A DNA stretch of 56,221 nt from Guillardia theta CCMP2712. Taxonomy: Eukaryota; Protista; Cryptophyta. The stretch is from contig NW_005434598.1 in assembly GCF_000315625.1 (NCBI RefSeq), forward strand, positions 353,647 through 409,867. Reading direction: 5' to 3'. The position numbers and the translations under genes were made by a program. The stretch's first letter is position 1. Every line of letters starts with the position of its first letter. Under the pieces are notes generated by a model. That model was not told the DNA's origin. It saw nothing but the letters and a program-made list of their open reading frames with translations, and did not search any database. Positions 33,036-37,019 of this stretch are shown here, piece by piece.

Positions 33036-33357
33036 ATTCGGCGCGTGCCGTTGGTTGAGAGTTGCCCTGCATACCGCAGCAAGTTGCCTCGTCCTCTGCA
33101 TTTCTTCCAGCAAGAACACCCTCGTACCTGAGACAAGAACGCATCAACACCATTGTAGTAGAACATCCCGCCATACAAGTTCTTTCCCTTTTTCTTCCTG
33201 TGCCCCTTCTTTCTCTTCCTCACCGTCCTAAATTCTTTCACTCCCTCCCTCCCTCCCTCCACAAATCCATCGCTGAATCCCATCGATACGTCCATATGTA
33301 ATGAGTCCTTCATCCTGCAAAAAAGTCTCCTTCATCCACTCACTAAAAGCCAAACCA

Positions 33358-33500
33358 TCTGCCTCCTGCCTCCTGCCTCCTGCCTCCTGCCTCCTGCCTC
33401 CTGCCTCCTGCCTCCTGCCTCCTGCCTCCTGCCTCCTGCCTCCTGCCTCCTGCCTCCTGCCTCCTGCCTCCTGCCTCCTGCCTCCTGCCTCCTGCCTCCT
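33358..33500. repeat. 7-bp tandem repeat (GCCTCCT) x ~20
   Basis: Directly visible. Confidence 0.95.
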
Positions 33501-33962
33501 CCCTCCCCCTCTTGTTCTTTCATTTTTCTTTGTGTCCCTCTTCTGCCTCATGTTCTTTTCGATCCTTCTGATGGAACATTATTATTTGAAATTACACCTG
33601 ATATTTTGAAATGTGAACAGAGCCTTCCTCAGTAAATTTTCTAATACTTTTCTGAGGAATGTGAATATTTAAAAAATTTGTAAAGTTTGCGATGCACCGA
33701 AGGGAAAGCGGAGGAGGAAGAGAGGGATGGCGAGGGCGAGGGCGAGACAAGACAAGACAAGGATGGGGGAGGGTCGAGAGGACTGAGGGAGAGATGAAGG
33801 CAGGGAGAAGACGGGCGGTCAGGGTTAGGGTGGTTGATCGAGGGATAGAGGTTGTTGAATAGAGTGACAGAATCAGCATTGGAGCGAGCGAGCGAGCGAG
33901 AGAGAGAGAGAGGGAGACGCAGTTCAAGCACACACCAACGTGAGAGACGGTTCAAAACCAAG

Positions 33963-36900
33963 ATGAACCTGAGGGAAGAAGCAAAATGCAGAGCAGGAAG
34001 CAAGAGGCTTAACGACGTTGTTGCTGTGCAAATGAGAAACAACAGCATTCAAATGATGGTTTTGGATTCTTCTGGCAATTCTTTCCCATATATCGATCAT
34101 GACTACCGTCAAACGCCTGCTTCTTCTGCTTCTTCTGTGTCTTTGACGGAAAGCCAACAGGATGGAAGATGGATCTCCGAGTGCTGGCAGCAAGAGGAAA
34201 GCGGTGCACCTGATCCTTGTTTGTTTTCAACTCACGTAAATCAGGAGGAGCTGGGACAAAATGAATTTCCGTCGCCCGAGCTGGTACTGGAGAGCTCCCT
34301 TGGCCCTGCTCCCTCCCCCTTTCATCACCTTCTACACTCACTAGCTGGTGTCTCAGAAGAATGCATGGATCTCGTGCCCTCGTCTCGGCCAGCCCATCGC
34401 GCGAGGTGACATGTTCGAATGCTTGTGCTCGACCTCAAAGTCTCCAGCGCCCTTCCTTCCTTGCAAACCTCCGCTCAAGGGAGCAGCAACGGAGCTGTTG
34501 GACGAGGGGGACCGGCGAGTGATGGTCGTGCTCTTTTCCAGCTGACAACCATCTCCCTCAGATTCGATGGCGGCATGTTCATGCAGCGACAGATTGAAGC
34601 CAGCCGAGACGTTGGCATGGTGCCGCTACTTATCCCTCCCTTTCCTCCCTCCCTCCCTTTCCTCCCTTTCCTCCCTCCCTTTCCTCCCTCCCTCCATTCT
34701 GTCGCTTGCCGTGTGCTGTTCTCAGCTTCACTTTTCTTTTCTCACATCTCACGCTTCACCTTTAATCTTACAAGCTCCCAGGTCATCTCGCTACTTGACC
34801 CTCAGCGCGGAATTCCCATCCCACAAGCGCAGGTGCTGATTTGCAGAAGGAGGAGGAGGAGGAGGAGGAAGATCATGAGACGAGCAGGAATGGGATGACT
34901 GGGACGTCGAGTATGTCGAGATCACTCCGTGAGCTCTTCTACTTGATGACCAGGTTGAGGCTGATGAGTTCGTTCGCTTCGCCTCGTTTCCCGCAGCAAG
35001 AGTGCGCAGCAAGTTGCAGCTGATGTTCAGGTCTCCTGGTGTGAGATTTGTTCGGGGTAACGAGAGATGACAGAAGTCAGTCTCAGCTTTCTTGAAGAAA
35101 AGATCCAACAGCATGGTCGCCATCTTCTGGTGATTCGCTGCTCTCCCTCGTCCTCATCACGTTCCTCTATACCTCCCCTGCAAGGGGTTCTCTCTTTTCC
35201 TTCCCGTCCTCGGACCTTGTCAATGCTCACATGCGACGTGATAGCGAGGATGGCTGCAACCTTACGGGGTATGCCATCTGCGCCTACTTACATCAGGTGA
35301 ACTCGTGCTTCCCTCCTCCCTCAGCCCAACTCCTTGCCTCCCCTCCTCCTCCCTCAGCCCAACTCCTTGCCTCCCCTCCTCCTCCCTCAGCCCAATCTCT
35401 TGCCTCTCCTCCTCATCTCTCGTCGTTCAGGTCCTCGGGATGTCGGTAAAGGATGCACTCGCTGAGTTCGCCAAGTCGCGTCCTCCTGGCATATTCCACC
35501 ACCCGTGAGCTGCTGCTTCTCCTCTGCTGCTGCTTCATCCCTCCCCCCCTGTCTTCTCCCTCCCTCACATTTCTTCGCTACTCTCATCCACCCTCGTCCT
35601 TGCCTCAGTCTTGTCTCTTCCATCAGGTACATCCAGGACTTGTGGGATCGCTTTGCCAAGAAGGAGGATGGAGCATGTCCTCAGGTGAAGGAGAAGCCGT
35701 CCTGGGCATCAGATACGGTGAAGCTTCGAACGTTCCTCGATTCCGTCCCCGTCCCTTCCTCTTGCGTCATCCTCTTTCTCCATCCTCCTCTTTCTTCTCT
35801 TCATCTTCGTGCAAGGACTTCTGATCTCTCTGCCCCTGCTCCAGCAAGCTCCTGTGCTCCTCTTTCCTTTTGTCTTCCGTTGAGCGCTCGCAGATCTTTG
35901 TGGCTGCACACGGGGAGTTTGCTCTTCCTGTTATCAAGCCCATCGCGTCAGACTCCAAGACAGGAGAGGAGCCTCTTCCTGCAGGCTGGTCCAAGCACTG
36001 GAGCAAGACTCACAACAAACCGTAAAACTTCCCTCCCTCCCTCCCTCCCTTCCCTTCCCTCCCTCCCTCCCTTCCCTCCCTCCCTCCCCTCCCTCTCATC
36101 GCCTTCACGAGCAGCTACTACTTCAATCGCTCCACCGGCAAGCAGAGCTGGGAGCTTCCCAGCAACGGAGACGTCAAGCCACCAGGCAAGATAGGAGTCG
36201 CACACATCCTTATCAAGCACAAAGGCTCTCGGCGCACCTGTGAGTCCTGCCCTTTCCTAATTGATACTCCTCCTCCTACTCCTACTCCTACTCCTACTCT
36301 ACTCTACTCTACTCCTACTCCTACTCTACACTTACTCCTACTCCACTCCTACTCCTACTCCTCATCATTCCATCCTCAGATCTCTTCTTCCCCCCTCCTC
36401 TTCTCTCCATCTTTCACCCTCCTCTTCCTTCAGCTAAGTTTGTGCAGCATCATGGAAGGACAAGGATGGCAGCACGATAAAGCAGCGCTCGATTGAAGAC
36501 GCGAAGCTCATTCTGCAAGGCATCCGCGACCTGCTGATGCAGCAGACTGCCTCGAACCTCCGCAAGAAGTTTCACGAGATCGCCAAGTAAGCGGGATGAG
36601 GCGACGAGAGGAGAGGAGGAGAGCGGTTGGAGGAGGCGACGAGAGGAGAGGAGGAGAGCGGGTGGAGGAGGCGACGAGAGGAGAGGAGGAGAGCGGGTGG
36701 AGGAGGCGTCAAGTGAGGAGGGAACTCACACGAGGAGGTAGGAAGGAGTCGGACTGCTCTTCTGCTGCCAAGCATGGAGATCTCGGTCTGGTGGCCAAGG
36801 GATCCCTTCAGCCTGCCTTTGAAGCTGCTTACAGCACCCTCCAGGTCCCCCTCCCCCTCCATGTTTCTTTTCTTCTCGTTCTGACTTGCCTCACCCTCTG

Positions 36901-37019
36901 CTCGTCCCTTCCCCTCACCCTCTGCTCGTCCCTTCCCCTCACCCTCTGGTCAGGTCGGTCAGCTCTCCGACATCGTCGAGACTGACTCAGGAGTTCATCT
37001 CATCTTGCGCACTTCGTGA
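33963..37019 (+). CDS. Fusion protein: capping-enzyme-type RNA 5'-triphosphatase/DSP-like domain (degenerate P-loop) + WW + parvulin PPIase (Pin1-like)
   Basis: Spliced exons give WISCPRLGQPIA, FLPCKPPL, MVAIFCEDGCNLTGYAICAYLHQ, ALAEFAKSRPPGIFHHPYIQDLWDRF, KPSW. These are followed by LPAGWSKHWSKTHNK..YYFNRSTGKQSWELP (WW) and HILIKHKGSRR, SDCSSAAKHGDLG, LQPAFEAA, SDIVETDSGVHLILRTS* (parvulin). The start codon is uncertain. Confidence 0.8.

What the first reader, a model, noticed from the sequence alone, without database searches (positions are those of the whole stretch)
34340..37019. Capping-enzyme RNA-triphosphatase-like pseudoenzyme fused to a Pin1 (WW + parvulin) module
Seen: splicing 35129 to 35245 (GT-AG) gives MVAIFC-EDGCN-L-TGYAIC. 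The flanking exons match, in order, hallmark segments of the cysteine-type RNA triphosphatase of animal/plant capping enzymes (W..CPR.GQP, FLP.K, HCTHGFNRTG, F...RPPGI....Y...L..R, P.W). The CX5R Arg is Leu and the preceding His is Phe. No guanylyltransferase domain follows; a full WW and parvulin domain do instead. Known: CX5R Arg is essential for phosphate binding, and both capping enzyme and Pin1/Ess1 engage the phosphorylated RNA Pol II CTD. Inference: an unusual architecture in which a probably dead triphosphatase acts as an RNA-end or CTD adaptor for a prolyl isomerase. The C-E-D-G-C spacing might also permit a disulfide.
Basis: partly seen in the sequence, partly recalled or inferred. 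Interest (0 to 1): 0.75.

Follow-up and report, generated by a model that had tools for sequence, protein, structure and literature searches.

The report
Dead capping-phosphatase domain fused to Pin1
A cryptophyte alga makes one protein in which an intact Pin1-type prolyl isomerase carries, at its front end, a domain derived from the mRNA-capping RNA triphosphatase. That domain's catalytic pocket has been rebuilt so it almost certainly no longer binds phosphate, and the undescribed combination is conserved across cryptophytes, hinting at a link between Pin1 and the RNA 5'-end machinery.

Summary
The window is Guillardia theta CCMP2712. The stretch is the annotated gene GUITHDRAFT_164988 (XP_005826374, UniProt L1IU31, 404 aa). 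Its protein threads exactly onto 17 exons at 34162-37019 (+).

An independent MMETSP transcript ORF of 264 aa spans the P-loop exon, the WW domain and the parvulin domain. It confirms both the 35129|35245 junction and the 35717|35894 junction, so this is one gene and not two.

Residues 26-214 match the human and mouse capping-enzyme RNA triphosphatase domain by sequence (E 5e-19) and by fold (TM 0.81-0.84). The P-loop reads FCEDGCNLTG where the family has HCTHGFNRTG. No guanylyltransferase follows. Residues 236-404 are an intact Pin1.

The fusion and the F-C-E-D-G-x-N-L-[ST]-G loop recur in at least 14 diverged relatives. All the named ones are cryptophytes (Guillardia, Hanusia, Baffinella). 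These relatives form one clade with support 99.

Seven positions around the pocket have switched from basic or polar to acidic or neutral. The second Cys is not conserved, so the disulfide idea fails.

G. theta keeps a separate canonical paralogue with HCTHGLNRSG.

My reading is a pseudo-triphosphatase that targets an active Pin1. Its partner is inferred to be the Pol II/Spt5 RNA-exit region and is untested.

No RNA reads could be laid. I found no paper describing this gene.

The parts
34162..34203 (+). Exon 1: start codon, MEDGSPSAGSKRKA. It holds a KRK cluster that is conserved in orthologues.
   Evidence: Exact threading of P0002. The N-terminus is conserved in P0003 and L031.
34245..34283 (+). 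Exon 2.
34357..34405 (+). Exon 3: KNAWISCPRLGQPIAR, the N-terminal W..CPR.GQP hallmark of capping-type triphosphatases.
34448..34514 (+). Exon 4: FLPCKPPLKG... followed by the only GC-AG intron.
34562..34619 (+). Exon 5.
34782..34832 (+). Exon 6: VISLLDPQRG..., equivalent to the canonical DLTN strand, with Asn replaced by Asp91.
34888..34928 (+). Exon 7.
34997..35030 (+). Exon 8. The 43-nt intron after it (35031-35073) carries a TGA at 35068-35070 in frame with Met138.
35074..35129 (+). Exon 9: ...KKRSNSMVAIF + first 2 nt of the Cys146 codon (third nt is 35245, exon 10). Met138 here is the start of the MMETSP ORF.
35245..35296 (+). Exon 10: (C)EDGCNLTGYAICAYLHQ, the degenerate P-loop, with Leu152 in place of the catalytic Arg.
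35431..35504 (+). Exon 11: VLGMSVKDALAEFAKSRPPGIFHH(P), the RPPGI motif.
35627..35717 (+). Exon 12: end of the phosphatase-like domain, ...KPSWASDT.
35894..36021 (+). Exon 13: linker and the first half of WW (LPAGWSKHWSKTHNKP). The 35717|35894 junction joins the two halves of the protein.
36115..36239 (+). Exon 14: second half of WW and the start of the parvulin domain (HILIKHKGSRR).
36448..36586 (+). Exon 15: parvulin helix region.
36742..36844 (+). Exon 16: parvulin core with SDCSSA (the Cys113 equivalent).
36954..37019 (+). Exon 17: TDSGVHLILRTS and the stop codon.

Best explanation
One 17-exon gene (34162-37019, + strand; GUITHDRAFT_164988) encodes a 404-residue protein with two parts. Residues 236-404 are a complete, probably active Pin1/Ess1-type isomerase. 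It has a WW domain that reads phospho-Ser/Thr-Pro and a parvulin domain that keeps the catalytic residues and the phosphate-selecting basic residues. Residues 26-214 are a paralogue of the cysteine-phosphatase-type RNA 5'-triphosphatase of capping enzymes. This domain keeps the fold and the nucleophile Cys. Its pocket, however, has been rebuilt: His to Phe, Thr-His to Glu-Asp, Arg to Leu, with neighbouring Asn to Asp and Lys to His. It should therefore no longer bind or hydrolyse a 5'-triphosphate. The rebuilt loop is invariant across a diverged cryptophyte clade, so the domain is kept for a non-catalytic job. My inferred reading is that it works as a docking module that places the isomerase on the early Pol II elongation complex, at the Spt5/RNA-exit region where capping triphosphatase domains sit, next to its Ser5-P-Pro6 CTD substrate. 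What is shown: the gene structure, a single transcript from the P-loop onward, homology and fold, the motif changes and their conservation, and an intact Pin1 module. What is inferred: loss of activity, and above all the identity of the docking partner.
For: P0002 threads exactly onto the window as 17 exons. The MMETSP transcript ORF P0001 runs from the P-loop exon to the parvulin stop. The relative P0003 is an uninterrupted 427-aa ORF with the same architecture (L029). The genomic contigs L030 and L054 show the same domain order. PDB sequence match to the RNGTT/Mce1 triphosphatase is E 4.8e-19. The AlphaFold2 model has pLDDT 91.4, and its best Foldseek hits are 2c46 and 1i9t with TM 0.81-0.84. 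The loop FCEDGxNL[ST]G is found in at least 14 relatives and Arg to Leu is 14/14 against 25/25 canonical. The clade has support 99. Pin1 aligns end to end at E 2.6e-29 with the H59, K63, R68, R69, C113 and H157 equivalents kept. A canonical paralogue with HCTHGLNRSG lies elsewhere in the genome. The RNGTT triphosphatase domain binds SPT5 on its own and lies at the RNA exit (PMC11139899). HCXXXXXR(S/T) is the defining catalytic motif (PMC5027499).
Against: No activity or binding data exist. The nucleophile Cys is invariant in the clade, which is unusual for a dead phosphatase and could mean residual or new chemistry. The Pol II/Spt5 docking idea rests only on analogy with mammalian RNGTT. In RNGTT the main Pol II anchor is the guanylyltransferase OB fold, which is absent here. 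The only G. theta transcript ORF on record starts at Met138, so expression of the N-terminal exons in this species is supported only indirectly. That support comes from the k-mer share seen in RNA-like runs, 0.26-0.29 against 0.259 expected for all exons, and from the orthologues. No reads could be laid.
Confidence: 0.6

Rival explanations
1. The N-terminal domain is still an enzyme or a sensor that uses its invariant Cys146 with a new specificity. The acidic pocket (Cys, Glu, Asp, Asp, His) could bind a metal or a cationic ligand, or it could act as a redox switch that controls the attached isomerase.
For: Cys146 is 14/14 conserved while the neighbours changed in a fixed, specific way: E147, D148, D91 and H186 are all invariant or nearly so. 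Pseudophosphatases usually lose the Cys first (my own knowledge).
Against: As far as I know, no cysteine phosphatase works without the P-loop Arg. The motif HCXXXXXR(S/T) is defining. A buried Cys can be kept for structural reasons alone. The second Cys needed for an in-loop disulfide is not conserved.
Confidence: 0.15
2. The dead domain acts within the molecule or as a decoy. It could mask the WW or PPIase surfaces until released, or it could compete with the genuine capping triphosphatase for a shared partner.
For: Known pseudophosphatases often act as competitors or scaffolds (my own knowledge). A canonical paralogue exists in the same genome.
Against: Nothing here tests it. The linker of about 25 residues between the domains is poorly conserved.
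Confidence: 0.1
3. The main product in G. theta is a 264-residue isoform that starts at Met138, and the upstream exons are a decaying relic or an untranslated leader.
For: The MMETSP ORF P0001 is typed 'complete' and starts at Met138. An in-frame TGA lies at 35068, inside the 43-nt intron 8.
Against: Half a phosphatase fold would not fold. The whole domain is predicted with pLDDT 91. Orthologues keep the full domain as an uninterrupted ORF, with no intron at that site. The N-terminal motifs are conserved. Retention of intron 8 in an assembled contig explains the ORF call.
Confidence: 0.05
4. These are two adjacent genes wrongly merged: a phosphatase-like gene and a separate Pin1 gene.
For: None was found.
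Against: A transcript ORF crosses the 35717|35894 junction. No ATG lies in exon 13 ahead of the WW domain. P0003 is one uninterrupted ORF.
Confidence: 0.02

Closest known systems
RNA triphosphatase domain of metazoan and plant capping enzyme (RNGTT/Mce1; PDB 2C46, 1I9S)
   Same: Homology over the full domain length (E 4.8e-19) and the same fold (TM 0.81-0.84). The N-terminal W..CPR.GQ, FLP.K, P-loop Cys-x2-Gly-x-Asn-x-[ST]-Gly, RPPGI and P.W motifs are all present.
   Different: The P-loop His and Arg are lost. The pocket is more acidic by about five charges. The domain is not linked to a guanylyltransferase and is fused to WW plus parvulin instead.
DUSP11/PIR1 and baculovirus BVP (stand-alone RNA 5'-phosphatases of the same family)
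   Same: The same subfamily fold, and no guanylyltransferase attached (ranks 8-16).
   Different: They keep HCTHGxNRTG and are active. They match less well than RNGTT (E about 1e-7 to 1e-8).
Pin1 (human) / Ess1 (yeast)
   Same: Residues 236-404 align with the whole of Pin1 (E 2.6e-29). The WW tryptophans, the loop Ser/Lys, the K-RR phosphate cluster and the catalytic His, Cys and His are all kept. This is the only locus in the genome where WW and Pin1-type PPIase hits lie next to each other.
   Different: It carries an extra N-terminal domain of about 225 residues, which I have not seen described for any Pin1 or Ess1.
Pseudophosphatases of the PTP/DSP fold (STYX, MK-STYX, myotubularin-related)
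   Same: A phosphatase fold with a disabled catalytic motif, retained under selection and presumed to act by binding.
   Different: STYX-type proteins lose the Cys and keep the Arg, so they still bind phospho-ligands (my own knowledge). Here the Cys is kept, the Arg is lost and acidic residues are added, so phosphate binding itself is probably gone.
G. theta MKP-FHA-Pin1 protein on contig C5 (earlier scan note s1-432800)
   Same: The same genome holds another Pin1-type parvulin fused downstream of a cysteine-phosphatase-fold domain.
   Different: That phosphatase is MKP-like with an intact HCGAGISR loop. It uses FHA instead of WW and is not related to capping triphosphatases.

Membership tests
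Cysteine-phosphatase-type RNA 5'-triphosphatase (capping enzyme TPase / PIR1 / BVP) | PTP/DSP alpha-beta fold of the capping-TPase subtype | tested here: met
   The AlphaFold2 model has pLDDT 91.4 and pTM 0.87. The Foldseek top hits are 2c46, 1i9t and 1i9s, with TM by target 0.81-0.84 and rmsd 2.4-2.7.
Cysteine-phosphatase-type RNA 5'-triphosphatase (capping enzyme TPase / PIR1 / BVP) | Sequence homology across the whole domain | tested here: met
   phmmer against PDB gives E 4.8e-19, residues 26-214 against 27-214 of human RNGTT. Pfam DSPc scores only 22.8 bits, below the cut-off of 33.5.
Cysteine-phosphatase-type RNA 5'-triphosphatase (capping enzyme TPase / PIR1 / BVP) | Catalytic P-loop HCxxxxxR(S/T) | tested here: not met
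   The loop reads FCEDGCNLT. The Cys and Thr are kept, the His is Phe and the Arg is Leu. Leu is found in 14/14 clade members against Arg in 25/25 canonical sequences. The motif definition is from PMC5027499.
Cysteine-phosphatase-type RNA 5'-triphosphatase (capping enzyme TPase / PIR1 / BVP) | Physical linkage to a guanylyltransferase (bifunctional capping enzymes only) | tested here: not met
   Pfam finds WW and Rotamase after the domain and no mRNA_cap_enzyme domain.
Cysteine-phosphatase-type RNA 5'-triphosphatase (capping enzyme TPase / PIR1 / BVP) | Metal-independent gamma-phosphate hydrolysis of 5'-triphosphate RNA | not testable with these tools
   This needs a biochemical assay.
Pin1/Ess1 (WW + phospho-specific parvulin) | N-terminal WW domain with both Trp and the phosphate-binding loop Ser-Arg/Lys | tested here: met
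   Pfam WW scores 40 bits at residues 246-276. The alignment to Pin1 residues 5-39 shows W, S-K, YYF and W kept.
Pin1/Ess1 (WW + phospho-specific parvulin) | Parvulin PPIase domain with the catalytic His59, Cys113 and His157 equivalents | tested here: met
   Pfam Rotamase scores 63.9 bits. AHILIKH, SDCSSA and TDSGVHLILR align with Pin1.
Pin1/Ess1 (WW + phospho-specific parvulin) | Basic cluster Lys63/Arg68/Arg69 that selects pSer/pThr-Pro | tested here: met
   IKHKGSRRTSSW aligns with VKHSQSRRPSSW of Pin1.
Pin1/Ess1 (WW + phospho-specific parvulin) | Phospho-dependent prolyl isomerase activity | not testable with these tools
   This needs an enzyme assay or complementation of yeast ess1.
Pseudophosphatase (PTP fold, catalytically disabled, conserved) | Loss of an essential catalytic residue together with evidence of purifying selection | tested here: met
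   The Arg is lost, and the substituted loop is invariant in 14 sequences down to about 35% identity. Actual inactivity was not tested.

The most novel reading that the evidence does not exclude
The rebuilt pocket (invariant Cys146, Glu147, Asp148, Asp91, His186 and an aromatic residue at 145) may be a new ligand-binding site for a positively charged group. Candidates are a metal ion, a basic or methylated side chain, or the N7-methylguanine of a finished cap. The domain would then be a new kind of reader that ties Pin1 action on the Pol II CTD to the state of the RNA 5' end, working as a capping checkpoint in cryptophytes.
Probability: 0.1. Interest if true: 0.85.

Novelty: new variant of a known kind. 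Interest (0 to 1): 0.58.

Why it matters
Natural gene fusions often mark proteins that work together. Pin1/Ess1 is known to reshape the Pol II CTD, and capping enzymes act at the same early step of transcription. I know of no Pin1 that carries a capping-derived domain, and no pseudoenzyme member of the RNA-triphosphatase branch of the phosphatase superfamily appears in the papers I could search.

If the dead domain does dock at the RNA exit or on Spt5, it gives a testable model for how prolyl isomerisation is aimed at promoter-proximal Pol II.

The locus is also a clean case of a phosphatase pocket being converted from cationic to anionic while the nucleophile is kept.

Together with the MKP-FHA-Pin1 gene in the same genome, it shows that cryptophytes have diversified Pin1 by swapping its targeting modules.

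Tried and rejected
- **RNA reads.** Read laying failed three times. One search hit a repeat at 33359-33500.
- **Exon-by-exon Pfam.** It gave WW and Rotamase hits only. The phosphatase exons are too short to score, and one of them (35627-35717) I sent one base out of frame.
- **Looking up P0001 on contigs.** The protein was not on record.
- **Searching for a G. theta transcript ORF of the N-terminal exons.** None was found; the only hits were Hanusia and environmental fragments.
- **Host guanylyltransferase.** The only strong hit is a giant-virus-like ORF on C267. No GTase was detected downstream of the canonical C22 triphosphatase paralogue.
- **Two-gene hypothesis.** Rejected.
- **In-loop disulfide C146-C150.** Rejected as a general feature.
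- **Neighbouring ORFs on both strands.** They gave no Pfam hits.
- **Self-joined spliced model.** I never sent one to any search tool. Searches used single exons by reference or the database proteins P0001 and P0002.
Full report
**What is there**

The assembly has 87.1 Mb in 669 contigs. A protein look-up identifies it as Guillardia theta CCMP2712.

The two WW halves and the last two parvulin exons scored. The phosphatase exons were too short to score.

A word search used a stop-free reference (window:35505-36191) restricted to the exon YIQDLWDRF...SWASDT. It returned P0001, a 264-residue ORF from an MMETSP transcriptome assembly. Its 90%-identity cluster also holds P0002. P0002 is XP_005826374 / EKX39394, GUITHDRAFT_164988, UniProt L1IU31, 404 aa, named only 'hypothetical protein' or 'peptidylprolyl isomerase'.

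All later searches used these database proteins. I sent no self-joined spliced model to any search tool.

**Gene structure**

P0002 threads exactly onto the window as 17 exons from 34162 to 37019 on the + strand. Of the 16 introns (41-208 nt), 15 are GT-AG and one is GC-AG.

So is the 35717|35894 junction that links the phosphatase-like half to the WW domain. Both junctions are present in the transcript-derived P0001. Exon 13 has no ATG ahead of the WW domain. The two-gene alternative is therefore excluded.

**One caveat on isoforms**

P0001 is typed 'complete' and begins at Met138. An in-frame TGA sits at 35068, inside the 43-nt intron 8. The simplest explanation is that intron 8 was retained in that assembled contig.

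I could not lay reads. One search was stopped by a repeat.

Two lines of indirect support exist for the full-length mRNA:
- Eleven RNA-like runs from five studies hold 0.26-0.29 of the sampled words. A fully spliced mRNA predicts 0.259, and exons 9-17 alone predict 0.215.
- Orthologues carry the whole domain without interruption (below).

**The N-terminal domain**

- **Sequence.** Residues 26-214 align over their full length with the triphosphatase domain of human and mouse capping enzyme (2C46, 1I9S; E 4.8e-19 and 1.7e-18). They align more weakly with BVP and PIR1/DUSP11.
- **Fold.** An AlphaFold2 model built on 42 homologues is confident (pLDDT 91.4, pTM 0.87). Its best structural matches are the same triphosphatase domains (TM 0.81-0.84), followed by PIR1 and BVP.
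- **P-loop.** The defining motif of this enzyme class is HCXXXXXR(S/T) (PMC5027499). Here it reads FCEDGCNLT.
- **Pfam.** DSPc scores only 22.8 bits, below its cut-off, and no guanylyltransferase domain is present.

**Conservation**

An exhaustive profile-free search found 933 relatives. Most carry HCTHGxNRTG. At least 14 representatives carry F/Y/L-C-E-D-G-x-N-L-[ST]-G instead.

These 14 fall on one side of a branch with SH-aLRT support 99, and they include several deep sub-branches.

Evidence that the fusion is shared:
- P0003 is an uninterrupted 427-residue ORF with the same three domains.
- The genomic contigs L030 and L054 show phosphatase-like, WW and parvulin exons in the same order.

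All the named members are cryptophytes: Guillardia theta, Hanusia phi and Baffinella frigidus CCMP2293.

Comparing the clade with 25 canonical sequences gives fixed switches:

| Position in P0002 | Canonical residue | Clade residue |
|---|---|---|
| 91 | Asn | Asp |
| 147 | Thr | Glu |
| 148 | His | Asp |
| 152 | Arg | Leu (14/14 against 25/25) |
| 185 | Tyr | Phe |
| 186 | Lys | His |

In addition, the canonical His at position 145 is replaced by an aromatic or Leu residue. The pocket therefore loses about five positive charges, while Cys146, Gly149, Asn151 and Gly154 stay invariant.

The disulfide idea is therefore not general.

**The C-terminal module**

Residues 236-404 align end to end with human Pin1 (E 2.6e-29). 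They keep the WW tryptophans and loop Ser/Lys, the Lys-Arg-Arg phosphate cluster, and the His, Cys and His of the active site.

In the G. theta genome this is the only place where a WW hit and a Pin1-type parvulin hit lie next to each other. Other Pin1-type parvulins sit on C99, C164 and C5.

**Genomic context**

- G. theta has a separate canonical paralogue of the triphosphatase domain, with HCTHGLNRSG, on contig C22. I found no guanylyltransferase after it.
- The only strong guanylyltransferase hit in the assembly is an intron-less 956-residue GTase plus N7-methyltransferase ORF next to an Rpb7-like ORF. This looks like a giant-virus-like insert.
- Neighbouring ORFs in the window gave no family hits.

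**How it probably works**

What is shown: one protein that joins an intact Pin1 to a capping-type triphosphatase fold, whose phosphate-binding pocket has been specifically and stably remodelled.

What is inferred: the domain is catalytically dead as a phosphatase and serves as a targeting or regulatory module.

Published structures and binding data say that the triphosphatase domain binds SPT5 on its own and sits at the RNA exit tunnel (PMC11139899). That makes docking on the early elongation complex the most economical guess, but nothing here tests it.

The invariant Cys and the acidic pocket leave room for a new ligand or a redox role.

**Comparison and novelty**

The closest relatives are the RNGTT/Mce1 triphosphatase domain and Pin1/Ess1. 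The N-terminal domain fails the catalytic-motif test for the first family, so it should be called triphosphatase-like and not a triphosphatase. The C-terminal module passes every sequence test for the second family.

The protein is in public databases without a functional description. Searches for its accessions and for the domain combination found no paper.

I saw that locus independently in six-frame translation.

**Verdict**

This is a real and conserved but undescribed variant of known parts. The biology is moderately surprising and the mechanism is open.

Noticed in passing
L026 (G000:C5:1196000-1204500, minus strand, about 6090-3490): A second Pin1-type parvulin lies downstream of a cysteine-phosphatase-fold domain. 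The order is rhodanese-like, DSPc with an intact HCGAGISR loop, FHA, then parvulin with no WW. An earlier scan note (s1-432800) calls it one expressed 608-aa protein.
   Followed up: partly
L043 / L048 (G000:C22, about 471640-472400, + strand): A canonical capping-type triphosphatase paralogue with an intact HCTHGLNRSG loop, split by introns. tblastn detected no guanylyltransferase downstream.
   Followed up: partly
L027 (G000:C267:26500-34500, minus strand, 4674-1807 and 6637-5891): An intron-less, AT-rich 956-aa ORF with guanylyltransferase plus cap N7-methyltransferase domains lies beside an Rpb7-like ORF. It looks like a giant-virus-derived insert or contaminant, and it is the only strong GTase hit in the assembly.
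   Followed up: partly
Proteins P0027, P0073, P0116 (also P0032, P0046, P0055, P0111 and others) from the big search: These are capping-enzyme-like proteins of unknown eukaryotes. Their triphosphatase P-loop has lost the Arg (for example HCVTGINTAG, HCTNGYNLTG, HCTYGFNLTG), and three of them still carry a real guanylyltransferase domain. They sit at separate places in the tree, so the Arg appears to have been lost more than once.
   Followed up: partly
L008 (G000:C164, about 91079-91465): A Pin1-type parvulin (HILLKHSRSRRLSS...) lies inside a 974-codon open frame, which suggests yet another large Pin1 fusion protein.
   Followed up: no
L006 (G000:C99:158052-158372): A Pin1-type parvulin 46% identical to the one studied here. 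No WW domain was detected in the 1.4 kb upstream, which resembles plant Pin1.
   Followed up: partly
window 33228-33609: A tandem repeat encodes (GGRRQEA)n on one strand and (LLPPASC)n on the other. It is the repeat that stopped the first read-laying run (33359-33500).
   Followed up: no
window 34630-34700, 35300-35420, 36025-36090, 36260-36340, 36600-36700: Nearly every longer intron of this gene is filled with short CT-rich or GA-rich tandem repeats.
   Followed up: no
window 34514/34515: Intron 4 has a GC-AG splice site (donor gcgagt). The other 15 introns are GT-AG.
   Followed up: yes
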